Shown: in pieces, positions 3,383-23,062 of the stretch
How positions within the stretch are numbered: the first letter of the stretch is position 1
Layout: each line of letters opens with the position of its first letter
IMG/VR virus record: IMGVR_UViG_3300005859_000281
Span: 1-23,694 of that record
Reading direction: 5' to 3' (one strand)
Length of the DNA: 23,694 nucleotides
Program-made: the position numbers and the translations under genes
The notes under the pieces: generated by a model
Databases searched by the model: none
What the model was told of the DNA's origin: nothing
The model's input: only the letters and a program-made list of their open reading frames with translations

Positions 3383-3880
3383 CTATAGGGCATTCGTATT
3401 CTCCTTTTTCTCTCTTTTCTTCTTTATCGTTTTTGCGTCTATCGTCTCTATCCCCTCTTCTTCCAGATATTTTAGCACTGCGTCACTATCATCTATCACT
3501 GTTACCTTATCCTGATCGTATTTTTCCATGAGCTTCCTTATGGCATCCCTCTTAAACTCATGGTCTTTCCTGAAGTCCTTCTCGCCCCTCAGCACGACCT
3601 CGGTGGGCTCTATCCCTATCTCTGACAGCTGTTTGAGAGTATCTTCACGTTGTTTTTCCGAACGTCCGCTAACTACTGCTATCGCTTCTGGTTTTTTCTC
3701 TTCAATTAACTGTTGGACAAACGTGATAACTTCCCGTTTGGGCTTGTCCATGTTCATGAACCTCGGCGATTGGAAGCATTCCCAAAACATACGTTTATTT
3801 CCGTTGGCTAGCTTCTCGCATTCGTTCCACCTGGCAGAAATATCGAAAAGCGTGCCGTCCAAATCTAGGATTAACATCAC
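3383..3880 (-). CDS. HAD-superfamily phosphatase, polynucleotide kinase 3'-phosphatase-like
   Basis: Motif I DLDGTL, motif II SGR, R..D...K, motif IV IDDSD; layout like the T4 Pnkp phosphatase domain. Confidence 0.85.
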   Translation of the reverse strand: MMLILDLDGTLFDISARWNECEKLANGNKRMFWECFQSPRFMNMDKPKREVITFVQQLIEEKKPEAIAVVSGRSEKQREDTLKQLSEIGIEPTEVVLRGEKDFRKDHEFKRDAIRKLMEKYDQDKVTVIDDSDAVLKYLEEEGIETIDAKTIKKKREKKENTNAL

Positions 3881-4458
3881 TTGGCTTCACTCTCTTTTGT
3901 TTGTTTTAAACCTAGTATTGCTATTTCTCCATTCTCTTCTTTGAAGTTTACCTCCTTAGCTTTTCCCTGGCGATTATACACGAGCCAAAATACATCTACA
4001 CCATTTTCGTCTTTTCCCCATTTTAGTTTGCTACATTCCCCATCAAATTTAGTACGAAAGTAGTTTCTCGCTTCTTGGTCGTTTTCTTCTTTTTGTAGTC
4101 CGTCTAACGTCTCCGGGTCAAACGGTTCAGTAAATAGGTAGATCTTCCTATTGTTTTTCCCGTCATCAAAAATGAAATATATCCCGAATTTGGAAATGTT
4201 AAGGTGCGAATTTATCATTAAGTCGCGATGTATATTTATAAATTCATTATCCACAACAGTAGAAATATTAACAGTGGTATGACCGTCAGTTATGTCTATA
4301 CATAATAAGTTTGCGTGCGGTAAGCGTGCGTGCGTGGCTTTGTCGGGTCTGAGGTAGAAAGAGACGTATGTTACAGCTATGGTTGGTGTAGTTTCGGGTA
4401 TGAACCCGTGGACACGCACTGTGAAATACTTATCAATGCTGATTCTCGAGCTTAGCAT
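3877..4458 (-). CDS. Hypothetical protein (~193 aa)
   Basis: Start moved to ATG 4458 because TATA TTTTTTAA (4489-4482) lies ~30 nt upstream; stop overlaps the HAD gene start. Confidence 0.75.
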   Translation of the reverse strand: MLSSRISIDKYFTVRVHGFIPETTPTIAVTYVSFYLRPDKATHARLPHANLLCIDITDGHTTVNISTVVDNEFINIHRDLMINSHLNISKFGIYFIFDDGKNNRKIYLFTEPFDPETLDGLQKEENDQEARNYFRTKFDGECSKLKWGKDENGVDVFWLVYNRQGKAKEVNFKEENGEIAILGLKQTKESEAK

Positions 4459-4481
4459 GGTAAATTCTTCACGCGATACTC

Positions 4482-4549
4482 TTAAAAAAGTCGAATTAGT
4501 TCTCAAACATATGTTTAAGAAACGAGATTCGTTTTGGCTTATTTTTAAA
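4482..4549. promoter_or_regulatory. Divergent promoter pair with central palindrome TCTCAAACATATGTTTAAGA
   Basis: TATA boxes 4482-4489 (-) and 4542-4549 (+); palindrome 4501-4520. Confidence 0.7.
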
Positions 4550-4572
4550 CCTTTTTGCGACAAGTTAAACCC

Positions 4573-4866
4573 ATGAAGCCGGAGTGTAAAGTTCTTTTGA
4601 AGGCATTCGAAAATCTTTCGTCTATTGAAAGTAAATACTATGAGGAAGATTTTCCTGAAATGCTGTCATTTATGTATCTTTTGGTAAAAGGTTACTGGAG
4701 AGTTAATGAGGAGGACGGAGTAATCGAAGAAGTAAAAATACCGCCATTCACGACTATATCCCTGCTAAATACCATGAGAGCAATCACGGCAAGAATTAGG
4801 AACGGTACCACAATCGAAGAAATCATAACCGAAAAGGAACTGTGCGGAGATGTTGAGGAGGTATGA
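4573..4866 (+). CDS. Hypothetical acidic protein (~97 aa)
   Basis: ATG 4573 is 31 nt after TATA; ATGA overlap with the next gene. Confidence 0.75.
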   Translation: MKPECKVLLKAFENLSSIESKYYEEDFPEMLSFMYLLVKGYWRVNEEDGVIEEVKIPPFTTISLLNTMRAITARIRNGTTIEEIITEKELCGDVEEV

Positions 4867-5270
4867 CAACAAATTCAACCGTAATAAATGCGTTACCCCC
4901 ATTTTTCTACACCCAAGTCTTTCTTGTTGACGTTGCAGTTGGGTTCATAATCATGACCGTAATTGAGCTGTTTCTGCTAAGAAACAGTAGCTTAACCCAT
5001 CTGCGACTCGCTCTGCCGTTTCTAACGTTTTCTGTAGGGTTTACTCTAATTTCCCTATATCTTTCTCCGTACATAACGTACAACCCAGTATACACAACAC
5101 CATTCAATGTCACGTACAGGGTCACGCCTTACAGTACCGACGGTGCTGTGCTTTTATACGTCAGCTTCGCAATCCTTGGACTATCTGCAGTATACTTTAT
5201 TTACGCGTTTGCGGTCGACGTGTTGCACCTTTCTGGTGGTAGTAAAGATGATGGTTATTTCGTGCCTTAG
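4863..5270 (+). CDS. Membrane protein (~3 TM helices)
   Basis: Three hydrophobic segments; SD GAGGAGG. Confidence 0.8.
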   Translation: MTTNSTVINALPPFFYTQVFLVDVAVGFIIMTVIELFLLRNSSLTHLRLALPFLTFSVGFTLISLYLSPYITYNPVYTTPFNVTYRVTPYSTDGAVLLYVSFAILGLSAVYFIYAFAVDVLHLSGGSKDDGYFVP

Positions 5271-5293
5271 TTCGTACCTTAGGGGTAATACAC

Positions 5294-5884
5294 ATGTCCA
5301 TGAAAATATCCCTGTTTAAGAAAAAAGCGTTGCCAAGCGTCTATAAGAATTACGACGCACTATTACTTTTGCCCCCAGCCACAGTCAAAACTGATAAAAA
5401 AACGAGTATAATAGAAAAAAACGGTGTGCATGTCGCTATAATGTATTCTGAAACCAACGGTATTTCTGTGATGTTGGATTTGCCCATTGATTTCTTAAAA
5501 CTATACTATAAGATGACTACACAAGTAAACCAGGGGAATCCGAGAGATAGGATGGTCTATTTTGCCATAGTTCACATTTCTTCGCAAGCATATGCAATAC
5601 AAAGAGCAAAAGTGCAAAAAATGAATGAGAGCACTAAAAGGAAGTTTTTCATTTTCCCCAGGTGGATTTGGCTCAGCCTAGAACGAAATGACGGTGTGAC
5701 GAATTATTTCGTCATAAACAGAATTGAAGACGATAATCCTGCAAACTTCTCAAAGGAATTTGATACATTCGGTGCCGTTGGGATTACCTTCAATAATTAC
5801 TTTATTTTCGCTAGTGTGGCGAGGAAGGAGTACGTAGCTTCCATAAATAAACAAATATCCCTCGGTCTGGGGTTTGGGTCATAA
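5294..5884 (+). CDS. Hypothetical protein (196 aa)
   Basis: ORF in a coupled operon (TAATG overlap with the next gene). Confidence 0.8.
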   Translation: MSMKISLFKKKALPSVYKNYDALLLLPPATVKTDKKTSIIEKNGVHVAIMYSETNGISVMLDLPIDFLKLYYKMTTQVNQGNPRDRMVYFAIVHISSQAYAIQRAKVQKMNESTKRKFFIFPRWIWLSLERNDGVTNYFVINRIEDDNPANFSKEFDTFGAVGITFNNYFIFASVARKEYVASINKQISLGLGFGS

Positions 5885-6402
5885 TGTCTCTCTCATATTT
5901 ACAATCGCTCGTTGGGAAAAACGTGGTATTATTCAACTATCTACGTAATATATTCAAAAATAGAATATACAAAATAGTTGAAAATGGGAATGAATATACT
6001 CTTGAGGTTGATATGGGGATAGCTAGCAGGTTACAGCACAGGATCACGCACCCCGGGATTTACTTTATCACAGACGTAATGATACAAGGTACTAGCTATG
6101 TAATTTTTCTAAAAAAACAAGTCGATCTAAAGAAGTTTGCACTGGTAAGCTCGACAACAACTTCTGAATATTACATTTCCTCGTACCGTAAAATACAGTA
6201 TAAAACCGATGCGGGTGTATTCGACGCTTTAGAATTCGATACGGGAGGGTTTAAGCACCTTACGTTTAACTATAATAACTGTATTATAGCGAAAGTGAAA
6301 AGGGCTGGTCATAAGCGTATTGCGGTATGCTTAGGTGATAGTGTCGTTATACAAGATATAAACAATGTTTCGTGCAGTTGTGAGTGGTTTACGGTTGAAT
6401 GA
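5884..6402 (+). CDS. Hypothetical beta-rich protein (172 aa)
   Basis: ORF with overlapping start/stop at both ends. Confidence 0.8.
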   Translation: MSLSYLQSLVGKNVVLFNYLRNIFKNRIYKIVENGNEYTLEVDMGIASRLQHRITHPGIYFITDVMIQGTSYVIFLKKQVDLKKFALVSSTTTSEYYISSYRKIQYKTDAGVFDALEFDTGGFKHLTFNYNNCIIAKVKRAGHKRIAVCLGDSVVIQDINNVSCSCEWFTVE

Positions 6403-7067
6403 GGTGGTGGATAACGGTATATACTAAAAAAGACGAAGTCCCTTCTGCCGAGCAGTTTCAATTCATCGTGTATAAAGAGGTATGTATGGGGAACAGTAGT
6501 ATGGTGTATCCTACTTTAGCTATAGAGAGGCTGAACACTGTAATGCTTACCTATTACAGCGATGAGATAGAAGAATTGTGGAGGGAATTAGTCCTAAAAA
6601 AATATGAGAATGCCACATCTGAGGACGAGCTAAGGCAGATATTGAAAATCGGTTGTGATATAATGTTCATCGTAATGAATGCATCTGGTGACGATGTTAC
6701 GCCGTTGGTATCGAAGATACTAAATAGCACAAGAAAAAAACATCTGTTTTATGTCAACGAGGAAGGACTTGTCTCTGAAAGTACCTATCTCATAGGCGTA
6801 CTAACAAAATTCGTTAATCCCAACGGGTTTGATGTACTCACTGTGTTGAGCATATTGAAAGACGTACAAATAAGGACGGCTACTATGATTAGCAGTATTA
6901 AAGGCACGTCGCTGTATCAGACACTTGTCAGCGAATTAGCCATAGATGAAAATACTATCGAGAAGAGATGCACGGCAAAGTACTATAGAGAATGCGTAAC
7001 AGAGAAGAAAACACAATTATTGAAAGCATTGCAGTTTATCAGGATGAATATAAATATTCCGCGTTAG
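6399..7067 (+). CDS. Hypothetical protein (222 aa)
   Basis: ORF with ATGA overlap. Confidence 0.8.
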   Translation: MRWWITVYTKKDEVPSAEQFQFIVYKEVCMGNSSMVYPTLAIERLNTVMLTYYSDEIEELWRELVLKKYENATSEDELRQILKIGCDIMFIVMNASGDDVTPLVSKILNSTRKKHLFYVNEEGLVSESTYLIGVLTKFVNPNGFDVLTVLSILKDVQIRTATMISSIKGTSLYQTLVSELAIDENTIEKRCTAKYYRECVTEKKTQLLKALQFIRMNINIPR

Positions 7068-7123
7068 AGCGACAAGGGTTTTCAGTTCCAAAAGAAATTT
7101 GCGGACGAAAGATAAAATAATAC

Positions 7124-7212
7124 AAACAGCTGTTTCAAGACTTTATCCTTCCCTTTATCGCCCTCCATCACGCTACTCATTGCCTAACTGGTTAGGCAGA
7201 AAGCTTAAAATA
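7124..7212 (+). promoter_or_regulatory. Two-box promoter module copy 4
   Basis: AAACAGCTGTTT 7124-7135; inverted repeat TGCCTAAC-TG-GTTAGGCA 7181-7198; TTAAAATA 7205-7212. Confidence 0.75.
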
Positions 7213-7283
7213 CTGATGTTTGGCATAAAAATGTACTGATCAAAAATGCCAAAAGTAAAAGTTAGGTTTGAGGGGTGTGGAAA

Positions 7284-8252
7284 ATGAGAATAGATATTAC
7301 AAAAAGTGGCGGTACTTCAATTTCGTTGTACCCGTTAGATGAATATCTCTCTTATGTTCTTTTTGATGACCTGTTTTTAAGACGAGACATTATACCTACC
7401 AAAGAACTATCAGACAAGCACGACGGATCGTTAACATTAGTTAACTATAAGCCTATGGCAACATTTAGTTTTGAGAACTCGCCAGGGTATATGCCATTTA
7501 TAATTGAAGTACGTGCTCAGTCTGAGGGAGATTCCACCTCCATCGAAAACCCAGCGGGCATAGAAGTGAGTTATGGAGAAAAAACTATACACCTCAATTT
7601 AGGTAATCTCAGCAGGGTAATTAAAGCATATGATTTTGAGATTTATAAGAGGACTGTCTATGTTAGTGTAATACAAGGTGCTACAGTTAAAGATTTTATT
7701 TTTGATGTGATCATACTAGCATACAGTGGAGGATCATACGGAGGAGCCATTGACACTGAGTTCACAAATAGGTGGGAATTCGCTGAGAAAAAAATAAAAC
7801 CATTAATTCAAACGTTAGAATCCGCTATTCCTACAATCCGAGAAGGTTTTAGGATCGAATATAAGTTTTACTATTCTCGCTATAGTGACATACTCCTATA
7901 CCCATACATTTTCCTCTTCCCTAAGGGAATTGTAAATGAAATCTCGGATTTCTTGTTATCTCTATATCAACAAACTTATGGCATCATTACAAAACTGCCA
8001 CCAGAATTTACACCTAACGAAAACGTACAATCCCCTGAGTTGCAAAAATTCCTTGAAAAGTTACCGCTCGATCTTATTGCAGAAGCGGTTATAGGCACAT
8101 ACGGTTCTTCTCCTGCGATACTTTTACCGAAAGGAGACTATTCTCAATACCTCACAGGCAATGAACGTATAATCAACCTCGAAAATAGTGATGTGATAGT
8201 CTTCGGTAATCCTCGAGCTCAAGAACAACAGACTCCCGCTCCTCAACAATAG
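7284..8252 (+). CDS. Hypothetical protein, probable member of a viral paralogous family (~320 aa)
   Basis: Long ORF; SD-like GAGGGGTG before ATG 7284 (alternative GTG 7275); C-terminus similar to ORF 2..124. Confidence 0.85.
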   Translation: MRIDITKSGGTSISLYPLDEYLSYVLFDDLFLRRDIIPTKELSDKHDGSLTLVNYKPMATFSFENSPGYMPFIIEVRAQSEGDSTSIENPAGIEVSYGEKTIHLNLGNLSRVIKAYDFEIYKRTVYVSVIQGATVKDFIFDVIILAYSGGSYGGAIDTEFTNRWEFAEKKIKPLIQTLESAIPTIREGFRIEYKFYYSRYSDILLYPYIFLFPKGIVNEISDFLLSLYQQTYGIITKLPPEFTPNENVQSPELQKFLEKLPLDLIAEAVIGTYGSSPAILLPKGDYSQYLTGNERIINLENSDVIVFGNPRAQEQQTPAPQQ

Positions 8253-8269
8253 AATGTAGGACAGAATAA

Positions 8270-9014
8270 GAAGGAGTTAAGGGCGGAAAGCCTCGCCATG
8301 GGATGGACAGCCCCTTATAGAAAGTTTCGATACCGCTTTGCTTTCTTTTTCTTTATAATTCTTTCATCTAAATAAATATTCTCATAGAAATGGCGAACTA
8401 TAATATAATCTCCTTCTTGTATCTTTTCCTTATATACTATATAAATTGATTTACTATGCTCTTCTGCTCTTATCTTATAAATTCTATAATTCATTAGGAA
8501 GAGAATAGGATTAAAGAATAAAATTTTGTTATTCTTAAATAATCCAAATATGAAGAATAAAACTATAATAAACACAATCAGTCCGATTAATGTGGCTGGA
8601 AAAACAGATAGTAACGCTAACACGTAAGTAGTCATTGTTATATTAGCGTAGTTTACACTCAGGTCTTCTATTCCAGTCACGTGATAAGTTCTCGGGCTTT
8701 CTTTGTCTTCCTCTGTCGTTATCAAGTAATAATAACCGTAATTCGAAATTATTAAAAGAGCTGATAGTATCATGTAGGGTATTAAAAGTAGGGGTATGCT
8801 AAAGGAATATATTCTAATATAAAATATAAAGAAATATTTAGAATAGGTAATCATTAGTATTATAAATACTAATGTATATTCGCTCAAGAACAATCGCAGT
8901 GAATTAAATATATGTGTACTCATGGACTGACTTACATTTATATTGTAATACAAACTAAATAAAACTTGTTTTATTGAGGGAACCAACGCCCTCCCTGGGC
9001 GAGAAGAAAGTCGG
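8270..9014 (+). mobile_element. Non-autonomous IS200/IS605-derived element carrying a passenger gene
   Basis: Left-end-like GAAGGAGTTAAGGGCGGAAAGCCTCGCC..GGATGGACAGCCCC (8270-8314) and right-end-like GGGAACCAACGCCC..GGGCGAGAAGAAAGTCGG (8978-9014) enclose one ORF; ends recognised from recalled Sulfolobales IS605-family termini. Confidence 0.6.
8315..8923 (-). CDS. Multi-pass membrane protein, KwaA (Kiwa)-like
   Basis: About 4 TM helices; TTYVLALL...FFNPILFLMNYRIYKI resembles the KwaA TY..P / NP.L...GY..Y pattern; very AT-rich; likely start ATG 8923. Confidence 0.55.
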   Translation of the reverse strand: MSTHIFNSLRLFLSEYTLVFIILMITYSKYFFIFYIRIYSFSIPLLLIPYMILSALLIISNYGYYYLITTEEDKESPRTYHVTGIEDLSVNYANITMTTYVLALLSVFPATLIGLIVFIIVLFFIFGLFKNNKILFFNPILFLMNYRIYKIRAEEHSKSIYIVYKEKIQEGDYIIVRHFYENIYLDERIIKKKKAKRYRNFL

Positions 9015-9096
9015 TTAGGTGCTCTTTAACAAACAATAAAGGAGAAATTAAACCACAAACAGAACCCTTATTAAATATTAAAACATATGTTTTTGC

Positions 9097-10455
9097 ATGG
9101 AACGTATCGAAGTAGAACTCGATGATCCTGAAATTTCAAAATATATTCAAAAATTAGGTGCAAATAACGTATATCTTGTTGGTGGCACTGTCAGGGACAT
9201 CCTGACTGGCAAGAAGCCTAAGGATTTAGATTTTGTAGTCACCGATTTCGATAAAGCGTTAAAGTTGGCAGAAGAGATGAACTTACCTATTCATGAAGAC
9301 GGCATAGATTTCGGAGTCCTTAGGATAGGAGATAAGTATGATTTTGCTTCATTGAGGAAGGAGCGATACGACACTGTTAGTAAACCTACCGTTGAGCTCG
9401 GTGCTTCTTTAGAAGAAGATGCGAGAAGGAGGGATTTTACAATTAATGACCTCTATGGCAAGATAGTAGGTATTCACGGAAATAAATTGGTAATGGAGAT
9501 CCTTGATTTCAACAACGGTTTGGAGGATCTACGTAATCATGTGTTAAGGTTTGTAGGAAACCCACAGGAGAGAATAGACGAGGATCCGCTTAGGATACTA
9601 AGGGGAATAAGGTTTAACCTTTACGGCTATAAAATGTCCCCAGACCAACTAGAAATAATGAAGAAGAACGTTGATAAGCTGGGTGGATTACCTATAGAGA
9701 GGATCAGTGATGAGATACTAAAAATACTAAAGGTTAACCCTGCGGAGGGGTTTAAACTACTCGACGAGTTCGGTCTATTAAAATATCTCTATGAAGAACA
9801 TTACGATGCATTAAAGAATACCTATCATGATAATAGGGGTGCACACCACGGCGAGAATGTTATAGAGCACACATATGAGACGTTAAAGAGGCTTAGACGC
9901 CCAGATATTGAAACGTTATTAGCAGTAATTTATCACGATGTAGGCAAACCTTATACTAGGAGCGAAAAAAACGGGAAGATAATGTTCATAGGTCATGCTA
10001 ACGAGAGTGCAGAAATTGCAAAGGAATTAATGAAGAACCTAAAGTTACCTAACAACCTGATAAAGGACGTTTCTAACCTAATAGAAATGCATATGGACTT
10101 TAATTTAGCACAGAATAACGAGAAGAACCAGGCACAATTAATTACTAAGTTAATGTCATTGTATTCTTGGAACCCTGAGAAAGCAAGAGAGATATATAAT
10201 AAACTAATAGAGCTATCTCACGCGGATACTGCAAGCGAGAATATACTTAACATGTCCGACAAGATAAAAGAGCCGATTGTAACTGGAGAAGAAATAATGA
10301 ATACTTTTGGTGTGAGCGGAAGCATATTGAAGCATTTGAAGGAGAGGGCATATACTCTACAACTCCAAGGATATGATAAAGGCGAGATACTGAAGACGTT
10401 GAAGGGTGATAACAAATTAAACGAGTTTAAGAAGGTGTTAGAAAATTGGAGCTGA
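9097..10455 (+). CDS. cca: Class II (bacterial-type) CCA tRNA nucleotidyltransferase / poly(A) polymerase family protein with HD domain
   Basis: GGTVRD..KDLDF (DxD), RKERY loop, RRDFTIN, EDPLRILRGIRF, ERISDE; HD domain EHT..YHDVGKP..GHA..HM..AD. Confidence 0.9.
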   Translation: MERIEVELDDPEISKYIQKLGANNVYLVGGTVRDILTGKKPKDLDFVVTDFDKALKLAEEMNLPIHEDGIDFGVLRIGDKYDFASLRKERYDTVSKPTVELGASLEEDARRRDFTINDLYGKIVGIHGNKLVMEILDFNNGLEDLRNHVLRFVGNPQERIDEDPLRILRGIRFNLYGYKMSPDQLEIMKKNVDKLGGLPIERISDEILKILKVNPAEGFKLLDEFGLLKYLYEEHYDALKNTYHDNRGAHHGENVIEHTYETLKRLRRPDIETLLAVIYHDVGKPYTRSEKNGKIMFIGHANESAEIAKELMKNLKLPNNLIKDVSNLIEMHMDFNLAQNNEKNQAQLITKLMSLYSWNPEKAREIYNKLIELSHADTASENILNMSDKIKEPIVTGEEIMNTFGVSGSILKHLKERAYTLQLQGYDKGEILKTLKGDNKLNEFKKVLENWS

Positions 10456-10511
10456 AAATCCTTAATAGGAAAGGTACCTCATTATTGAGGTTTCATGAAT
10501 TTGCACTCGAC

Positions 10512-11153
10512 CTATTGAGGGGTATTAGGGAGGGATGTTAGGGAGAGGAAATGAGGTATTCCAAAAGGGATACAAATATTACGTATTCCGTTGCATTCGC
10601 CTATATATGCATTTATCTCTTTATTCATATCGCAGTTCTCTTTTGAAAGCTTATGGAACACTCTTCCGTTTCCGTCTAAAATCCTGTATTTATTCCCCTC
10701 TTTAACCACAATTATCCGATCCTCTGCTAGCTTGCCCCTTCTCTTACCGTAATTCTCTCCATCTTCACAAAGTTTCCTCTTTATTTCTTCATTTTTCACG
10801 ATCTCTTCAATATTCTTGTATTTATACCCTGGAAAACCTTGTATTTCAGTTGAGATTATAAGATCCTTTAACTTAACGCTACCTTCTTCCCACGTACAAG
10901 ATTCGGCAGTTATTTCTTTTGCTATGAACTTCCTCTTAAACATTAAACTAAGCCCGTAAAATAAATCATAAATCTCCTTACAGTCCTCTTCTATTCCTTT
11001 CTTATGCTCACGGCACTTTTTGACTAGCCCATCTATATTAATTATATCAGGGGTTTTATCGCGAGTTAACGATGCTAATTCGTGCAATATATAACTTTTT
11101 ACAACCTCTAATCGCGACTCTTGAGTTAAATGCTCAGGATATTTTGTTATCAT
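10512..11153 (-). CDS. ParB/Sulfiredoxin-like domain protein
   Basis: IIVVKEGNKYRILDGNGRV resembles the ParB/Srx I.V....Y.I.DGxHR signature (H replaced by G). Confidence 0.55.
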   Translation of the reverse strand: MITKYPEHLTQESRLEVVKSYILHELASLTRDKTPDIINIDGLVKKCREHKKGIEEDCKEIYDLFYGLSLMFKRKFIAKEITAESCTWEEGSVKLKDLIISTEIQGFPGYKYKNIEEIVKNEEIKRKLCEDGENYGKRRGKLAEDRIIVVKEGNKYRILDGNGRVFHKLSKENCDMNKEINAYIGECNGIRNICIPFGIPHFLSLTSLPNTPQ

Positions 11154-11310
11154 ACATTACCTTTTTGATGTTTTTGTTTAAAAAGAAAAGGTGTTTATCC
11201 ATCAACAATAAACCTCAAACAGCTGTTTATGAGAGCGGAATAGGATCTGACTTGCTTGAGCTTGCCTTACCAACAGTCAGCTTTATTTGCCGTAGTTCTA
11301 AGGGTATAAT

Positions 11311-11652
11311 ATGATTACCCAAAAAGAAATGGTTTCGGCAATTTATAATTGTGTTAAGAAACGTGAAAAACATCTTATTGAGGAAAAGTCTTTCTTAATT
11401 TCCCTCTCTGTAGGAATCCCTGCAGACGACTTTTATGAAGTCGATGAACATCTTACTTATCGCGGTTTGGCAAACGATTACGTTGCTTACTGCGAAAATT
11501 ATTTGCCTATATTAGATAAATACGACAAGAAAACGATTTTAGAGGCTTCCCTGTACATGTTTAACCTAATAAGGAGAGGAGTGCGTGGTAAATTAAACGA
11601 AAAAGCCTCAAAATTGCTCTCGGAACTTAATCTATTCCAAGGCTATTCTTAA
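11311..11652 (+). CDS. Hypothetical protein (113 aa)
   Basis: ORF with TTTATTT ~30 nt upstream and a T-rich tract downstream. Confidence 0.75.
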   Translation: MITQKEMVSAIYNCVKKREKHLIEEKSFLISLSVGIPADDFYEVDEHLTYRGLANDYVAYCENYLPILDKYDKKTILEASLYMFNLIRRGVRGKLNEKASKLLSELNLFQGYS

Positions 11653-11710
11653 TTTCTTTAATAACCTCTTCTTTCTTTCTTCAATTTACTGTTCCCAATG
11701 ACGAAACGAA

Positions 11711-11878
11711 CGGCAAGCCTCGTCTCAGTCCTTAACGAGGTTTTAATTTAGTACTGACGAAACTAGAAGAAGGAGAGAAAAAGAGGGAAAAAGTACGAAA
11801 TGCTATATAGGAGAAAAAGTACGAAATAAGGGAAAAAAGATAACGGTAATTCGAACTGAACTGCGGGGAGGAGGTTAG
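11711..11878 (+). mobile_element. Degenerate IS200/IS605-end remnant
   Basis: CGGCAAGCCTCGTC..CAGTCCTTA (left-end-like, 11711-11734) and GCGGGGAGGAGGTTAG (right-end-like, 11863-11878). Confidence 0.45.
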
Positions 11879-12529
11879 AATCACCGAGAAGATTACAGTA
11901 TTCTTTGCGTATATAACTATAGTATTATCGTATATGGACGATTTTACTTCTCCACCATCATGTACCACTATTATGCTTCCATTTATTGGGTAGTATAATG
12001 TCTGTTCTATCAGTGCTGTTCCATTTATTGTGATTTTTCCTTTTTGCACTGTTACATTCCCGTTGTATAGTATCTGCCAACCGTATTCCGATACCCCATA
12101 CGATGAGTTGTATATTACAGTAAAATAAGCATTTATGATCGGATATATCGTCCCTGCAGGGGCGAATCCGCTTATAGATAAGACAGCAGTTTGAGTGTTA
12201 TATAAATATAATGTAATTACATAGGGAGAGTCTTGCGGAATAGCAACAGTAGGATCTGGTGCTGTAACGTTTACTATAACATATTCGTGCGGTTTTATGA
12301 TTATTATGGTTGGGTACCAACGATGGCTATTAATTATAGGCACCAATACATATGTTTTATTGGTAGGGTTTTGTATGCATATCGTTATCACGTTGTACTT
12401 ATTTATTTCTCCTACGTCGTAAAAATCCAATACCTTTGCATGCAATTGCGGGTGATAGAAAAAAATAGAAAACGTGAAAAGAGATGGTATTATAACTGCT
12501 AACATTAGTACGATTTCAAACTTTTCCAT
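11732..12529 (-). CDS. Membrane-anchored/secreted beta-rich probable glycoprotein
   Basis: N-terminal TM; several N-x-S/T sequons (NKT, NVT, NSS, NGT, NGS); likely start ATG 12529 with GGTG SD. Confidence 0.75.
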   Translation of the reverse strand: MEKFEIVLMLAVIIPSLFTFSIFFYHPQLHAKVLDFYDVGEINKYNVITICIQNPTNKTYVLVPIINSHRWYPTIIIIKPHEYVIVNVTAPDPTVAIPQDSPYVITLYLYNTQTAVLSISGFAPAGTIYPIINAYFTVIYNSSYGVSEYGWQILYNGNVTVQKGKITINGTALIEQTLYYPINGSIIVVHDGGEVKSSIYDNTIVIYAKNTVIFSVILTSSPQFSSNYRYLFSLISYFFSYIAFRTFSLFFSPSSSFVSTKLKPR

Positions 12530-13565
12530 CTTGCACCATCCATTCAGCATACTGTAACGCAAAATAAAATGTAAAATACCCCAAATCTCTAAAAGAGAAT
12601 ATCCATATTAACGCGGGAAGACCCCAAGCTAATTCTTTCTTATTATTATATAATAGGATTAATGCGAAAAGAGGCATCTCAAGCACGGTGTACACGAACG
12701 AGGGTATAGGTAACCCGAATGCGGTAAGAAATGAAAACGAAATGCCCTGATGTGCAACCGGTTGTGTAATAGTTATAACGGACGCAAGATATTGCTTTGA
12801 AATGAAGGGTATTGATGAGAGCAGTAACGGTAACGTGAATTCTGTTATCTTTCTAAGTTTTTGCTTTTCAAATTTAATTAGAAGAATAGCTATCAATATT
12901 GCAAACTGCTTTACGTCTGCAGAGATTCCCAGGAGCAGGTATCTGAATCTCTCATTAAATATTGCAAGAAACGCAATAGAATATGCGAAAAGGTTCAGTT
13001 CTTGCCCTGTCGCAAAATCGTACGAAAGTGCAGGAAATAGGAAAAAAGATGCGATGAAAACGTTTTCGCGTCTTTTGATGAAGGAATAGGTAAAAGCTAA
13101 AACAGCTGTTATTACGTCTACTGTTTCAAGGTTATGCAGAATTGCAACACTGATGAACGATAATGGAGGGTAAATATAGACGGACGGTAAAAATGAGTTT
13201 GACGTAGTGCCGGTCACAACGTTATACGGAACGTGATATATGGAAAACGCTTTAGCCATTGAGTAAAGGTACGGATTTTTTCCGTCTAGGAATAAGTGTG
13301 ACGCATATAATATTATTGCTTCTTCATCCGTCAGGATAGGTAATCCCGTCATGATGTTCACTACAGCTGTAATAGTTGCAATAGCAAAAGCCGAAACAAT
13401 GAGTATTCTTTGCCTTACGAAGATAGAGAGCATACCTAGAGCAACAACGAGAAATGCCGTAGGCAATAAATACGGTTTTCCGTCACCTAAAAACGCTGTT
13501 CCTATGCTGATTAAACCTAGCCCTGCCAAAAACCATGATATATTATCTTTCAATTTTTGTTCCAT
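12516..13565 (-). CDS. GT-C fold integral membrane glycosyltransferase (GT87/DUF2029-like)
   Basis: About 10 TM segments; TDE acidic motif, GKNPY, YIYPPL, VKQF. Confidence 0.65.
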   Translation of the reverse strand: MEQKLKDNISWFLAGLGLISIGTAFLGDGKPYLLPTAFLVVALGMLSIFVRQRILIVSAFAIATITAVVNIMTGLPILTDEEAIILYASHLFLDGKNPYLYSMAKAFSIYHVPYNVVTGTTSNSFLPSVYIYPPLSFISVAILHNLETVDVITAVLAFTYSFIKRRENVFIASFFLFPALSYDFATGQELNLFAYSIAFLAIFNERFRYLLLGISADVKQFAILIAILLIKFEKQKLRKITEFTLPLLLSSIPFISKQYLASVITITQPVAHQGISFSFLTAFGLPIPSFVYTVLEMPLFALILLYNNKKELAWGLPALIWIFSFRDLGYFTFYFALQYAEWMVQDGKV

Positions 13566-13577
13566 AACCGACTCCTG

Positions 13578-14237
13578 CTACAATCTGTCGGTACTTATCG
13601 GAGTAATACCTAACGTCTGTGCTATTTCGAGTGGAGATAACATTTCCACTCTCATTTTCGATGTGCTTACTCCTGCAACTTCCATGATACTCCTTTCAAA
13701 CGCTAACAAAAGTAACACTACTAGTTTATGTGCATCATTAAGCTTAGCTATTATATCATCATAATTTGCATCGATTGATATCAAACTATGAAGCTCTGAA
13801 AACTTTTCAGACAATTCGTCAATGGAAAGACTTGAAAACCTATCAGTCAAAATCGATAATAAAATCTGGAAATTATCATCTACGTTAAATGGAGTGCCGT
13901 AGAACTGGAGAGACCCGCTCTTAAGATCTTTTGTTAAAATCAAGACGTAATTGTTTAGGATTTCTTGCACAGTTGTTATTTTGATGGCTTCTTTTTGGGT
14001 CACCTGCCTTGTCGGTATGATAGCTTTTTCCCTGATTGCTTGCCTGACCAGGTTTGGGTCAACTTTTACAATGTTTCTCTTCCCAAGTGGCGATAATTGA
14101 GGTTGTTGTTGGGTTTGTTGTATTTGTTGAAACAGTTGTGGTGGTGCAGGCGTTGTCGTGCTTGGTATTTCATAAGTGGGTTCTTGTTGCTGTTGTTGTT
14201 TTTTAGTATTGGAGTTATTGGAGTTATTTAGGCTCAT
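13578..14237 (-). CDS. Hypothetical protein with N/Q/P-rich N-terminus
   Basis: 219-aa ORF divergent from moxR; TATA 14269-14262. Confidence 0.85.
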   Translation of the reverse strand: MSLNNSNNSNTKKQQQQQEPTYEIPSTTTPAPPQLFQQIQQTQQQPQLSPLGKRNIVKVDPNLVRQAIREKAIIPTRQVTQKEAIKITTVQEILNNYVLILTKDLKSGSLQFYGTPFNVDDNFQILLSILTDRFSSLSIDELSEKFSELHSLISIDANYDDIIAKLNDAHKLVVLLLLAFERSIMEVAGVSTSKMRVEMLSPLEIAQTLGITPISTDRL

Positions 14238-14261
14238 ACTACTTTCTTGTCCCGGAAGACG

Positions 14262-14319
14262 TTTAAAAAGTGGGTTTTGACGTTCAAACAGGTGTTTGAG
14301 GAAACTTTTTAAGTTTCCT
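14262..14319. promoter_or_regulatory. Divergent promoter with TCAAACAGGTGTTTGA palindrome and an inverted repeat around the TATA box
   Basis: Palindrome 14284-14299; AGGAAACTT-TTT-AAGTTTCCT 14299-14319. Confidence 0.7.
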
Positions 14320-14335
14320 ACACCAGATGTTTTTT

Positions 14336-16106: not shown

Positions 16107-18467
16107 ATGCAAAGCTTCTTTCATGATAACGAAGATGATGAGAGACAACTGACTGAACTAACAAACACTATTTTTGAAACAGTGGTAAATGAACTTGGAC
16201 ATTTGTCTGATTATCTTTCACTTACACCAGACGTTATGGATAGTTTAAGAGATACTGTATATAAACTTGTCAAGATAGCATCGCAACAAAACAAACTTCT
16301 TTTGCAATTCCCAGCAGTCCTCGCTTATTTCGTTTATAATTTTTTAAAAAATATCGATTTAGATAGGATAAAAGACATAAACGAAAAATTAGACAATATT
16401 CAGCGTCTGATACAACGTAAAAACTTGCAGGGTTTATCATTCAGCACTATCAAACAGCTGTTACAACAAGAATTGCAGGAGAAAAAATTCAGACGCAACA
16501 GACCCAATAAAGCAGAAAAACAAAAAGAAGAGCAGAAACAAAGCGGAAAAGAAGAAAAACAACAAGAACAGCAGAAGCAAGGTGGAAAAAGATCCAACAA
16601 AGTAGAAAAACAACAACAAGAAGGAGAAAAACAAGAAGAGGGAAAAGAAGGGCAGGAAAGTGAAAGCGAAGAGAGCCAAGGACAACAAGGACAGGAATCG
16701 GGAGAAGAAAGCCAGGAGGGTAACGAGCAGGAAAGCGGTGAGGAACAGGGGCAACAAGAAGGTGGAGAAGGAAACCAAGGAGAAGAAACACAACAAGAAG
16801 GACAAGAAGGAGGACAGCAAAGTGAAAGCGAAGGCAACCAAGAGGAGGGAGAAGAAGGGGAGTCACAAGAAGGTGGAGAAGGAGAACAGGGAAACGGAGA
16901 AGAGGGCGAGGAACGGGGAAACGAAAACCAAGGGGAACACGGACAGGAATCAGGAGGAGAAGAAGGGCAACAAAGCAAAAACGAAGGAGAACAGCAAAGT
17001 GGAGAAGAAGGAAACGAAGGAGAACGTGGCAATGCCCAAGAAGGACAGGAATCAGAAGGTGAAAGCGGGAATGAAGAAAGTCAAAGTGGAGAAGAAGGTG
17101 GAGAACAACAACAAGGGCAGGAATCAGAAGTGGAAAGTGAAAACGAAGGAAACGAAGGTCAAAATAGTGAGGGACAAGAAGGTCAAAACGGTGAACAAGG
17201 AGGAGGACAGGGAAACGAAAACGAAGAGAATCAAAGCGGAGAAGAAAGCGGAGAAGGTCAAAATGGCGAACAAGGAGAAGGAAGCGGAATGAACCAGGAG
17301 GGTAACGAGCAGGAAAATGAGGGACAAAGCGGAAATGAAGGGAATGAGGGAGAACAACAAGGAGAAGGGAGTCAAAGTGGAGAAGAAGGTGAGGGACAGG
17401 AATCAGGAGAAGGGCAGGAAAGTGAAAGCGAGGGGAGCCAAAATGGGGAAGGAGAAACCCAAGAAGGTGAAGGAGGAGGACAGCAAAGTGGAGAAGAAGG
17501 CAACCAAGGTCAAAGTGGAGAAGAAGGAGGACAGGAATCAGGAGGAGAAGAAGGGCAACAAAGTGAAAACGAAGATATTATAGAAGACCTCGAAAATAAC
17601 ATAGATGAAGAATCAAAGATTTTAGACGGATTGCAAGAAAGCCTTCAAGAGTCCTTAACAGCTTTATCTATTGGGAAAGGCTCAGGAGGAGGAGTATTAA
17701 AGGATATCAATCCTAGAGTTTTAGAATTATTAGAGAGTGCTAACAGGCTTTTGGCTTTGGCTAACCAAGTTGATTTACAGTACGCTAACAGAGGCGTTAA
17801 AGATCAGGGAGGGGTGATGAGGGGGATAACAACTGGAAATAATGTCAAACATATGTTTAAGAGTCAACTAGTTTTACCGGATGAGATTTTCCTCGAACGG
17901 TATACTAACAGAGCCTTACTGCAAAGGGCGGTAGAAAATGAGGGCGTTGGGGACTTATATTTCATGATAGATAAAAGCGGGTCTATGGGGAATTTTATGC
18001 CGAACGGGTATACTGCGTTTGAAAATGTTTCGGCTGTAGCCTTAGCTTCTGCTATGGAGGCAGAAAAGAACAGTAAGAAGGTGTTTGTACAATACTTCGA
18101 TTCTTCGTCAACCGAGCCTATAGATGTTAACAACGTTTTCGAAGTAGCTCAGACCCAACCCGGAGGAGGAACGGACATGATGGTTGCATTACAAGACTTC
18201 ATGGAATATTATAATAACTATCCCGGGTTAAAGGACGTAAGACAGATCTTCATACTATCTGATTTTGAGACGAACTATGATACTACGCTTTATTATTTCA
18301 AGAACTTTGCAAGAAATAATGGCTTAGTAGTTACGTGCATACATGTATATAATGATGAAGTGCCTGCTCGTATGCAAACCATAATAGACGAAATCTGTGA
18401 TGAATATTATAAATTTAATAATTATGATGCAGGCGAATTATTTTCAGCCGTGTATTCAAAGATTTAG
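16107..18467 (+). CDS. VWA-domain co-chaperone with long E/G/Q-rich linker (ATV p892-like)
   Basis: MIDAS DKSGS...GGGT...ILSD at the C-terminus; directly downstream of the MoxR ATPase. Confidence 0.9.
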   Translation: MQSFFHDNEDDERQLTELTNTIFETVVNELGHLSDYLSLTPDVMDSLRDTVYKLVKIASQQNKLLLQFPAVLAYFVYNFLKNIDLDRIKDINEKLDNIQRLIQRKNLQGLSFSTIKQLLQQELQEKKFRRNRPNKAEKQKEEQKQSGKEEKQQEQQKQGGKRSNKVEKQQQEGEKQEEGKEGQESESEESQGQQGQESGEESQEGNEQESGEEQGQQEGGEGNQGEETQQEGQEGGQQSESEGNQEEGEEGESQEGGEGEQGNGEEGEERGNENQGEHGQESGGEEGQQSKNEGEQQSGEEGNEGERGNAQEGQESEGESGNEESQSGEEGGEQQQGQESEVESENEGNEGQNSEGQEGQNGEQGGGQGNENEENQSGEESGEGQNGEQGEGSGMNQEGNEQENEGQSGNEGNEGEQQGEGSQSGEEGEGQESGEGQESESEGSQNGEGETQEGEGGGQQSGEEGNQGQSGEEGGQESGGEEGQQSENEDIIEDLENNIDEESKILDGLQESLQESLTALSIGKGSGGGVLKDINPRVLELLESANRLLALANQVDLQYANRGVKDQGGVMRGITTGNNVKHMFKSQLVLPDEIFLERYTNRALLQRAVENEGVGDLYFMIDKSGSMGNFMPNGYTAFENVSAVALASAMEAEKNSKKVFVQYFDSSSTEPIDVNNVFEVAQTQPGGGTDMMVALQDFMEYYNNYPGLKDVRQIFILSDFETNYDTTLYYFKNFARNNGLVVTCIHVYNDEVPARMQTIIDEICDEYYKFNNYDAGELFSAVYSKI
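16500..17575 (+). repeat. Intragenic purine-rich imperfect repeats encoding GQESGEE/GEQQ units
   Basis: For example a 35-bp exact repeat at 16941-16975 and 17529-17563. Confidence 0.85.
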
Positions 18468-20865: not shown

Positions 20866-20949
20866 AAGGGGGATCGAGGTTGCTCTGAAAAGCAGGAAAT
20901 CCTCACCGCGAGGTGGGGATGCCCCGTCCGTAAGGACGGGATAGTTCAT
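20866..20949 (+). mobile_element. IS200/IS605 remnant with right-end hairpins
   Basis: Hairpins ATCCTCACC-GCGA-GGTGGGGAT and CCCGTCC-GTAA-GGACGGG followed by TAGTTCA. Confidence 0.65.
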
Positions 20950-21896
20950 GCATTACCCAATACCTCAGGGAAAGTAGGTATACCGTCCTTCACGTATTTT
21001 ATCATCATATCCGCTACATCCCACCACATGTATTTAGGTCTTATAGGTACCTCACTAACGTCGCAAGTCATGCCTTCGGCGTCGAGGGGTCTATATAAAT
21101 CCGGGTCTATCTCATAAGTACCACCTACTTTCTCCATTACGTACTTCAAAAAGTCTTCCACACTCGCTATAACACCAGTGCAGAGGATATACCTTTTCGG
21201 CTCCTCTCCTTCCATAACTTTATTGAATATCTTCACATATTCTCCCGCGTATCCCCAATCTTTTTCAGCCTTGATATTACCTAATTTCACATGCTCCTTT
21301 TCCACTAAGTTCTTAACTATTTTCATGGTCACAAACTCTTCGCCCCTCAACTCGCTCTCGTGATTAAACGTTACAAAATCATAAACCTTAAGCCCCCATA
21401 CTTTACGGTAATAAGTAGCGATATACATTAATGAAACTTTACTTATTGCGTAAGGTGTAACGGGAGCCAGCGGTGTAGAAAGGGTTTGAGGGCGTTCCAA
21501 CGGGTGACCGAATACCTCACTCGAAGCAGGTAAAAATACTTTAGTCTCAGGCGTATGTTTCCTAACAGCCTCCAATATAGCATAAGCCGAAAGCTCGTTC
21601 ACCTGAGCCGTATAGATGGGGTTATTATAGCTATACGGAACGAAGCTCATAGCACCATAATGATATATCATGTCGGGCTTTAGCTCACGTACTATGTCGA
21701 AGACGTTTTCATATTCTGTAAGGTCAGCATAGACAAATTTAGGAGATACACCAAGAATTTCAATGACAGTCCGCATCTGGTTAGTCAACCCGTCTGCTCT
21801 ATGCCTGGTTAATACATATAACTCATCTCCCTTCTTTATATGAAGGAAGGTAGAAAGACTTGAGTCCTGACCCGCACCTGTAATTAAAACCTTCAT
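20946..21896 (-). CDS. gmd: GDP-mannose 4,6-dehydratase
   Basis: ITGAGQD, ASSEVFG, YAISK (YxxxK), FNHES.LRGEEFVT.KI, LGN...KDWG, YRP. Confidence 0.9.
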   Translation of the reverse strand: MKVLITGAGQDSSLSTFLHIKKGDELYVLTRHRADGLTNQMRTVIEILGVSPKFVYADLTEYENVFDIVRELKPDMIYHYGAMSFVPYSYNNPIYTAQVNELSAYAILEAVRKHTPETKVFLPASSEVFGHPLERPQTLSTPLAPVTPYAISKVSLMYIATYYRKVWGLKVYDFVTFNHESELRGEEFVTMKIVKNLVEKEHVKLGNIKAEKDWGYAGEYVKIFNKVMEGEEPKRYILCTGVIASVEDFLKYVMEKVGGTYEIDPDLYRPLDAEGMTCDVSEVPIRPKYMWWDVADMMIKYVKDGIPTFPEVLGNA

Positions 21897-22583: not shown

Positions 22584-22615
22584 TTAAAAATCGTTATAAT
22601 ATCAAGAATCTATTG

Positions 22616-23062
22616 ATGTCGAGATTCTTGGTGTCAAGATTGCTGAAATTTGCCGTGGTCGGGGGGCTAGGCACGTTCGTGAATGAACTAGTATTTTTAT
22701 CTACTACTAAGCTTTTATCCATATCGATATCATTAGCATTAGCAATAGAGCTTTCAATAATATTTAATTTTATACTAAATGATATTTGGACTTTTAAGGA
22801 TAAAAGAGTAGGAAGTTTTATTAAGAGACTACTTAAATTTCATATGTCGTCAGCTAGTGGAGGAATTATTCAGTATATTGTGGTAATTTCCATTATTGTA
22901 ATCATGTTTCATTTTAGTAATGCTTCGGAAATAGTGGCAATATTGTTTTTTACGTCTTATTTAAAACTTCAGTCTTTAGTACTTGGCATAATCAATTTCA
23001 TAGGAATAATTTCTGGGTTCATCGTAAGATTTATAACAAGTATAAAGTTGGTATGGACGTGA
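22616..23062 (+). CDS. gtrA: GtrA-family protein (putative lipid-linked sugar flippase)
   Basis: KFAVVGGLGTFVN...SIIFNFILNDIWTFKD; four TM helices. Confidence 0.88.
   Translation: MSRFLVSRLLKFAVVGGLGTFVNELVFLSTTKLLSISISLALAIELSIIFNFILNDIWTFKDKRVGSFIKRLLKFHMSSASGGIIQYIVVISIIVIMFHFSNASEIVAILFFTSYLKLQSLVLGIINFIGIISGFIVRFITSIKLVWT

What the first reader, a model, noticed from the sequence alone, without database searches (positions are those of the whole stretch)
8315..8923. Orphan KwaA-like (Kiwa defence) membrane protein carried inside IS ends
Seen: an AT-rich ~4-TM protein with a TY...NP.L...Y..Y pattern and a small beta-rich C-terminal domain; no kwaB (DUF4868)-like neighbour is present. Known: Kiwa is a two-gene kwaAB anti-phage system. 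Inference: a captured defence component reused for superinfection exclusion or as a dominant-negative decoy.
Basis: inference. Interest (0 to 1): 0.6.

Follow-up and report, generated by a model that had tools for sequence, protein, structure and literature searches.

The report
Partner-less KwaA gene in archaeal virus
A spindle-shaped virus of hot-spring archaea carries an intact, conserved copy of KwaA, the membrane sensor of the Kiwa anti-virus system, without its partner gene, whereas its closest relatives on plasmids and in cells keep a two-gene operon, so the virus may use the sensor to sabotage or imitate host immunity.

Summary

The window is a fragment of an uncultivated SMV-like Sulfolobales virus. 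It contains neither KwaB (DUF4868) nor any other candidate partner.

The nearest homologues (90% aa, 91% DNA) sit in a two-gene operon, kwaA plus an overlapping 351-aa gene. This operon occurs on conjugative-plasmid-like contigs, in Stygiolobus and Sulfurisphaera tokodaii, and in a CRISPR/SIR2 island of Sulfolobales HS-7. Window-to-operon homology (8337..8975) ends exactly at the partner's ATG. I could not show that the partner is KwaB-like.

Partner-less copies occur in at least 10 flank contexts on virus-like contigs, and dN/dS is about 0.1-0.25. The "IS ends" are not supported: there is no transposase and no target duplication, only a short GC-rich junction element.

Function is untested. 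I rate a dominant-negative decoy against the cellular KwaA-partner system as most likely (about 0.4), ahead of superinfection exclusion. The finding is a new variant of a known kind and is testable in Sulfolobus.

The parts
8315..8923 (-). kwaA-like CDS, 202 aa (P0001): four TM helices, an intracellular loop and a C-terminal cytosolic beta-rich domain; stop TAA at 8315-8317, start ATG at 8921-8923
8924..8975 (-). Conserved AT-rich upstream block, the presumed promoter. It is shared with the plasmid and cellular operon copies and with orphan copies in other contexts, and it carries 3- and 6-nt indels typical of non-coding DNA
8337..8975 (.). Block of 90-91% DNA identity to the kwaA half of the two-gene operon (L010-L014). 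Identity ends at the position of the partner gene's ATG (L010:716)
8275..8320 (+). GC-rich junction element, full copy, just downstream of kwaA. Related copies lie downstream of the paired operon (L012, L013, L040), in L085 and L049, inverted in L050, and (core only) at the SMV4 variable-region border
8989..9012 (+). Half copy of the same GC-rich element, just upstream of the kwaA promoter block
9097..10455 (+). Divergent neighbour: class II CCA-adding tRNA nucleotidyltransferase with an HD domain. It co-occurs with orphan kwaA in several different arrangements (window, L015, L021, L046)
7275..8252 (+). Convergent neighbour, 325 aa, phrog_20664 (function unknown). It is present, diverged or deleted in sister contigs, so it is not a fixed partner
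7068..11731 (.). Hypervariable accessory region of this virus lineage. SMV4 has only two small ORFs at this position

Best explanation
Shown: the gene encodes a genuine but divergent member of the KwaA family, the four-TM tetrameric membrane sensor and scaffold of the Kiwa defence system. It sits in the hypervariable accessory region of an uncultivated SMV-like (bicaudavirus-like) virus of Sulfolobales. It belongs to a Sulfolobales-specific KwaA clade. In cells and plasmids, members of this clade form a two-gene operon with an overlapping gene of 351-357 aa. On virus-like contigs they are almost always partner-less, intact and under purifying selection. Inferred mechanism (about 0.4): during infection the viral protein inserts into the host membrane. 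Its transmembrane and cytosolic surfaces show no orphan-specific substitutions, so it could co-assemble with the cellular or plasmid KwaA, or titrate the partner protein. This would yield sensor complexes that cannot signal, acting as a dominant-negative decoy against a Kiwa-like system carried by competing plasmids and some hosts. The neighbouring CCA-adding enzyme and a PNKP-like phosphatase elsewhere in the window suggest that this virus keeps counter-defence genes.
Against: There are no functional data. The paired system is rare in sampled genomes (3 of 301), which weakens the selective case for a dedicated decoy that is so widespread in viruses. The partner is not demonstrably KwaB, so the operon's defence role rests on architecture and on one defence-island context. 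The complex prediction gave no verdict. The tree backbone is unresolved, so the direction and number of transfers are not established. The contig is estimated at about 44% complete, so an unlinked partner elsewhere in the virus cannot be excluded.
Confidence: 0.45

Rival explanations
1. Superinfection exclusion or stand-alone membrane defence. The viral KwaA tetramer alone, or with a host factor, blocks entry or DNA delivery by competing viruses or conjugative plasmids, protecting the infected or carrier-state cell for the resident virus.
For: The protein is a membrane protein of a sensor family that acts at virus attachment sites. It sits in a variable accessory region typical of moron-type genes. 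Orphans are widespread and conserved even though the paired system is rare in genomes.
Against: In E. coli, KwaA without KwaB gives no protection. No effector domain is fused to the protein. No conserved neighbour could supply an effector.
Confidence: 0.25
2. A structural or membrane-remodelling protein of the virus's own cycle (channel or viroporin, entry, assembly or egress factor) that shares ancestry with KwaA. Under this view the cellular defence operon could even derive from the viral gene.
For: The KwaA tetramer has a central channel-like pore. Orphans outnumber paired copies and are more diverse than them. The direction of transfer is unresolved.
Against: tblastn at E<=0.01 finds no homologue in any deposited phage or archaeal virus genome searched, including SMV1, SMV3, SMV4 and ATSV, so the gene is dispensable for this virion type. 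It lies in the hypervariable region, not among core genes. Remnants of the partner's start codon after orphan genes argue that the operon is ancestral.
Confidence: 0.15
3. One half of a complete system whose effector is unlinked. The effector would be encoded in the missing part of the viral genome, or the virus would recruit the host or plasmid partner protein for its own benefit.
For: The contig is estimated at about 44% complete. The cytosolic docking domain is conserved.
Against: Kiwa genes and the Sulfolobales pairs are always adjacent and overlapping. No partner is found in the syntenic 25.9-kb contig or within several kb of any orphan.
Confidence: 0.1
4. A passenger of an IS or MITE, or a decaying remnant with no function.
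For: Short GC-rich repeats flank the gene, and the cassette occurs in many contexts.
Against: There is no transposase, no clear TIR or TSD (my reading), and no Rfam match or significant fold. The ORFs are intact and dN/dS is about 0.1-0.25.
Confidence: 0.05

Closest known systems
E. coli Kiwa KwaA (PDB 9mrg, 9mrr, 9mrx, 9o0i; bioRxiv 10.1101/2023.02.26.530102)
   Different: Only 13-16% identity. The score is below the NCBIfam equivalog cut-off (45.9 against 100 bits). It is encoded by an archaeal virus and has no KwaB. In the HMM alignment, the KwaB-contacting residues named in the paper (H156, Y181, F183, K194) do not line up with identical residues.
Canonical kwaA-kwaB operons of Thermoproteota (L029-L032)
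   Same: Archaeal, with KwaA of 186-201 aa. hhalign gives 97.6% probability.
   Different: Those KwaA genes lie directly upstream of a PF16162 KwaB of 299-330 aa. In the tree the window's clade is separated from them by a long branch.
Sulfolobales kwaA plus 351-357-aa partner operon (Stygiolobus sp. CP850M; S. tokodaii, partner STK_13050; Sulfolobales archaeon HS-7, partner HS7_14360; plasmid-like metagenome contigs)
   Same: Same KwaA clade, with 43-90% aa identity to the window protein. The promoter block is shared, and DNA identity reaches 91%.
   Different: These loci carry the overlapping partner gene, which the window lacks. They lie in conjugative-plasmid-like, integrated-element or CRISPR-island contexts, not in a virus.
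Viral homologues of host immune components used as inhibitors, and phage membrane superinfection-exclusion proteins such as T4 Imm or Sie-type proteins (from general knowledge; not tested here)
   Same: A virus-encoded copy of one piece of a host defence complex, or a small viral membrane protein kept in an accessory region.
   Different: I found no precedent for an anti-Kiwa sensor mimic. The known anti-Kiwa factor is the DNA mimic Gam, which acts on KwaB.

Membership tests
KwaA (Pfam PF28043, NCBIfam NF041622, PADLOC KwaA) | Significant full-length match to KwaA sequence profiles | tested here: met
   PADLOC gives 9 models, best E 4.8e-9 covering residues 4-186. NCBIfam gives E 5.5e-12. Precomputed Pfam PF28043 is recorded. 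The only PDB profile hits are KwaA. hhalign against canonical archaeal KwaA gives 97.6%.
KwaA (Pfam PF28043, NCBIfam NF041622, PADLOC KwaA) | Score above NCBIfam's curated equivalog cut-off (100 bits) | tested here: not met
   The score is 45.9 bits. The protein is a distant member, not an equivalog.
KwaA (Pfam PF28043, NCBIfam NF041622, PADLOC KwaA) | [quoted passage not shown] | tested here: met
KwaA (Pfam PF28043, NCBIfam NF041622, PADLOC KwaA) | Homotetramer in the membrane | not tested
   No oligomer prediction or experiment was done.
Complete Kiwa system (kwaAB) | Adjacent kwaB with a DUF4868 (PF16162) domain | tested here: not met
   PF16162 has no six-frame match in the window at E<=10. 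The flanking genes are phrog_20664 and a CCA-adding enzyme.
Complete Kiwa system (kwaAB) | Protection against viruses or plasmids | not testable with these tools
   This needs expression and challenge in a Sulfolobales host.
Sulfolobales KwaA-partner operon | KwaA of this clade followed by an overlapping 351-357-aa partner gene | tested here: not met
   The KwaA half is met, with 90% aa identity to L010-L014 and L022. The partner is absent by tblastn and by HMM, and homology stops at the partner's ATG.
Sulfolobales KwaA-partner operon | The partner is a KwaB homologue | tested here: inconclusive
   There is no Pfam, PADLOC, NCBIfam or PDB match. Only Sulfolobales relatives appear among 1.84 billion representatives. 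hhalign against KwaB gives below 1%. The AF2 model has pLDDT 36. ESM feature neighbours of P0069 are KwaB clusters at 0.80-0.81, which is a lead only. Those of P0065 are unnamed and GAPS4b_N clusters.
Insertion sequence or MITE | Transposase, terminal inverted repeats and a target-site duplication | tested here: not met
   There is no transposase domain in any ORF of 90 aa or more. The repeat finder reports no TIR. Only a post-hoc 15-nt core (12 of 15 positions) occurs in inverted orientation. I saw no TSD.

The most novel reading that the evidence does not exclude
Sulfolobales carry a Kiwa-like membrane defence whose effector is unrelated, or unrecognisably related, to KwaB. Several lineages of their viruses have taken only the sensor gene and keep it as an anti-defence decoy that poisons the host or plasmid sensor complex. 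This would be the first viral counter-measure aimed at the KwaA side of Kiwa, and the first Kiwa-type arms race described in archaea.
Probability: 0.3. Interest if true: 0.8.

Novelty: new variant of a known kind. Interest (0 to 1): 0.62.

Why it matters
The published Kiwa survey considered only complete bacterial kwaAB operons, and the full-text searches I ran found no report of partner-less KwaA genes or of KwaA in archaeal viruses. This locus shows three things. A KwaA clade circulates among Sulfolobales viruses, plasmids and cells. In cells it is wired to a partner that standard profiles do not recognise. Viruses repeatedly keep the sensor alone under purifying selection. This gives a concrete, genetically tractable test of whether viruses can disarm a membrane-sensing defence by mimicking its sensor. 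It also points to a possible new effector family for KwaA-type sensors.

Tried and rejected
1. AF2 of the partner family (6 sequences) gave pLDDT 36 and was unusable, so no fold comparison with KwaB was possible.
2. Complex prediction of viral KwaA with the partner gave no verdict (score 0.00, controls not run). This is not evidence either way.
3. hhalign of the partner against two KwaB alignments gave below 1% probability.
4. The exhaustive representative search with the partner profile found only its own Sulfolobales family.
5. tblastn of P0001 against 50,697 phage and archaeal virus records found nothing. Megablast of the L007-type and L004-type contigs also found nothing, so I call those contexts 'virus-like' only on the basis of gene content.
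6. The IS or MITE idea was rejected.
7. The flanking GC-rich blocks have no Rfam match and no significant fold.
8. The exact 17-nt core of the junction element occurs in only 5 IMG/VR contigs, and only one of them (L085) is related, so it is not a widespread repeat.
9. The ML tree backbone was unresolved, so I make no claim about the number or direction of captures.
11. The 46.9-kb contig carrying an identical gene (L037) is not held and could not be scanned as a whole.
12. A fixed functional link to the 325-aa neighbour was rejected, because that gene is deleted or displaced in sister contigs.

Full report
WHAT THE WINDOW IS

The 23,694-base window is the entire record held for this 'genome'. 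It is an IMG/VR-type virus contig (Ga0080003_1000571) that CheckV estimates at about 44% complete. Its best DNA matches are Sulfolobus monocaudaviruses: SMV4 at 88% over 59% of the window, then SMV3 and SMV1. The window carries the MoxR-type ATPase and vWA gene pair, an AAA ATPase, and many PHROG families of archaeal tailed-spindle viruses.

Relative to SMV4, the stretch 7068..11731 is a hypervariable accessory region, where SMV4 has only two small ORFs. In the window this region holds:
- a phrog_20664 gene at 7275..8252 (+);
- the target ORF at 8315..8923 (-);
- a class II CCA-adding enzyme at 9097..10455 (+), 91% identical in DNA to Acidianus tailed spindle virus;
- an unknown 213-aa gene at 10512..11153 (-);
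- a 113-aa gene.

THE OBSERVATION

The ORF is intact at 202 aa from the ATG at 8923. All 29 aligned homologues start at the equivalent Met. The 52 nt upstream of it are a conserved AT-rich non-coding block with indels that are multiples of three. The longer TTG start at 8986 is therefore unlikely.

The gene is AT-rich. Hydropathy gives four TM segments. The AF2 secondary structure places strands in the TM2-TM3 loop and after TM4.

IS IT KwaA?

Five independent profile resources agree:
- PADLOC: nine KwaA models, best E 4.8e-9, covering 4-186 of 202 residues.
- NCBIfam NF041622 'anti-phage protein KwaA': E 5.5e-12, although its 45.9 bits is below the 100-bit equivalog cut-off.
- Precomputed Pfam PF28043:KwaA is recorded for this protein and for nearly all of its 63 homologues.
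- A profile of the family finds only two sequences in the whole PDB at E<=10. Both are 'Kiwa protein KwaA' and both align end to end.
- hhalign gives 97.6% probability (E 4.8e-12, 166 columns) against four canonical Thermoproteota KwaA proteins. I recovered these by first searching for their PF16162 KwaB neighbours.

IS IT AN ORPHAN?

PF16162 (KwaB) has no six-frame match in the window even at E<=10, and neither flanking gene resembles KwaB.

THE CLOSEST RELATIVES ARE PAIRED

The word search found 63 homologues (51-90% identity), nearly all from hot-spring metagenomes. The nearest ones (90% aa, 91% DNA) are each followed by a 351-352-aa gene whose ATG overlaps the end of kwaA by 8 nt. This is seen in L010-L014, in a Stygiolobus sp. 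CP850M contig (L022), and in L039-L043 and L080.

The same pair, much more diverged (KwaA 54% and 43%; partner 51% and 46%), occurs in two further genomes:
- Sulfurisphaera tokodaii 7, where the partner is STK_13050, in an integrated-element-like stretch with ParB, an XPD-like helicase and a pRN protein.
- Sulfolobales archaeon HS-7, where the pair lies between cas1/cas4 and cas2/cas3 and close to a SIR2 gene.

L011 carries a VirB4/TraG-like ATPase typical of Sulfolobus conjugative plasmids. In a sample of 301 genomes of the order, only three carry a KwaA of this clade, and all three have it paired. The gene order, overlap and sizes mirror the canonical kwaA-kwaB operons I recovered from other Thermoproteota.

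IS THE PARTNER KwaB?

I could not show it.
- It has no Pfam, PADLOC, NCBIfam or PDB match.
- An exhaustive HMM search of 1.84 billion representatives found only its own family.
- hhalign against two KwaB alignments gives below 1%.
- The AF2 model is unusable.
- Language-model feature neighbours of the S. tokodaii partner are three KwaB clusters at 0.80-0.81, below the tool's reliability mark. Those of the plasmid-type partner are unnamed and GAPS4b_N clusters.

These are leads only. The operon is therefore either a very divergent Kiwa or a KwaA sensor coupled to a different effector.

HOW THE VIRAL COPY RELATES TO THE OPERON

DNA identity between the window and the operon copies covers only 8337..8975, that is kwaA plus its promoter block. 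It stops at the base corresponding to the partner's ATG. As a result, the last residues of the viral protein differ from those of the operon versions. Several other orphans (L021, L047, L045, L054) still read the first two codons of the partner gene immediately after kwaA before diverging. This is most simply explained if orphans descend from the paired arrangement.

ORPHANS ARE A FAMILY, NOT AN ACCIDENT

A metagenome scan returned 45 loci. Only six have the partner, and the rest are partner-less, many with 1-4 kb of downstream sequence. Clustering the flanks gives at least ten distinct contexts:
- The window's own lineage: L015, L016, L021/L048 and an identical copy on a 46.9-kb contig, L037. 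L021 is syntenic with the window from 3447 to 15417.
- Other SMV-like arrangements in the same accessory region, with KwaA variants down to 55% identity.
- 37-46-kb contigs with a family B DNA polymerase.
- Contigs with MoxR, vWA and a helicase.

Pairwise dN/dS against the window copy is 0.09-0.26, including orphan-versus-orphan pairs. Among orphans the cytosolic C-terminal domain is the most conserved part, with mean column identity 0.86. No column in that domain separates orphans from paired copies. The ML tree shows one tight Sulfolobales clade far from canonical KwaA. Its backbone is unresolved, so I do not claim a number or direction of transfers.

THE 'IS ENDS'

No ORF resembles a transposase, and the repeat finder gives no terminal inverted repeat.

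The gene is bracketed by a GC-rich element: a full copy at about 8275-8320 and a half copy at about 8989-9012. A 15-nt core occurs exactly twice in the window, in inverted orientation, but I defined that pattern from these two sites. Related copies lie downstream of the paired operon at points where contigs diverge (L012, L013, L040). Others are found in L085 and L049, inverted in L050, and (core only) at the SMV4 border of the variable region.

The element has no Rfam match and no significant fold. I read it as a junction or recombination element of these mobile genomes, not as IS ends. That reading is inference.

MECHANISM

Published work on E. coli Kiwa shows the following:
- KwaA tetramers bind KwaB dimers through ICL1 and the C-terminal barrel.
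- The supercomplex senses membrane disturbance at infection sites.
- Deleting either gene abolishes defence.

By analogy, a KwaA without an effector should not defend on its own. A conserved, effector-less sensor expressed by a virus that shares hot springs with plasmids carrying the paired system is most simply a dominant-negative or titrating decoy. I put this at about 0.4.

The main counter-argument is that the paired system is rare in sampled genomes. Superinfection exclusion (0.25), a role in the virus's own membrane biology (0.15) and an unlinked effector (0.1) remain open. A functionless remnant is disfavoured by the selection signal.

NOVELTY

The full-text searches I ran found no report of KwaA in Sulfolobales or in archaeal viruses, and none of partner-less KwaA. 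The main Kiwa study analysed only complete operons. I class this as a new variant of a known kind.

Noticed in passing
window 9097..10455 (+) and 3383..3880 (-): A bacterial-type (class II, HD-domain) CCA-adding tRNA nucleotidyltransferase lies next to kwaA, and a HAD/PNKP-type phosphatase lies elsewhere in the window. Together they look like an RNA-repair kit that could counter tRNA-targeting host defences. The CCA gene is itself an indel: present in the window, L015, L021 and L046, and absent in L016.
   Followed up: partly
window 8275-8320 and 8989-9012; L012:2650-2680, L040:5825-5860, L085:6780-6830, L050:776-825, L001:7259-7273: A GC-rich element of about 45 nt recurs, in either orientation, at points where related virus and plasmid contigs diverge. 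It may be a recombination hotspot for cassette exchange among Sulfolobales mobile elements.
   Followed up: partly
L010:716-1771, L017:8001-9056, L019:8001-9074: The 351-357-aa partner of Sulfolobales KwaA is a family restricted to Sulfolobales. It forms two clusters among 1.84 billion representatives and has no recognisable domain. In HS-7 it lies inside a CRISPR-Cas/SIR2 island, which makes it a candidate new defence effector.
   Followed up: partly
window 16501-17500, inside ORF 16107..18467: Extreme strand composition (AT skew 0.75-0.90, GC skew 0.43-0.57), that is a long purine-rich tract inside the 786-aa vWA-domain gene. Several spurious antisense ORFs overlap it.
   Followed up: no
window 10512..11153 (-): A 213-aa protein with no family match apart from weak PD-Lambda-5_A hits (E 0.008) around a D-G-N-G-R motif. 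It is partly deleted in sister contigs L016 and L021.
   Followed up: no
window 20946..21896 (-) and 22613..23062 (+): An NAD-dependent sugar epimerase/dehydratase (GDP-mannose dehydratase-like) and a GtrA-family membrane protein. These are glycosylation genes carried by the virus.
   Followed up: no
L021:8155-8215 versus L021:6588-6655: In the sister contig, a 61-nt copy of the 3' end of kwaA lies inverted on the far side of the phrog_20664 gene, so that gene is bracketed by an inverted repeat. The window has only weak traces of this (repeat finder I2 and I9).
   Followed up: no
L046:292-897 and downstream: An orphan kwaA whose upstream flank is the plasmid-type one, but which is followed 13 nt later by a CCA-adding enzyme gene. 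It appears to be a recombinant between the plasmid and virus arrangements.
   Followed up: no
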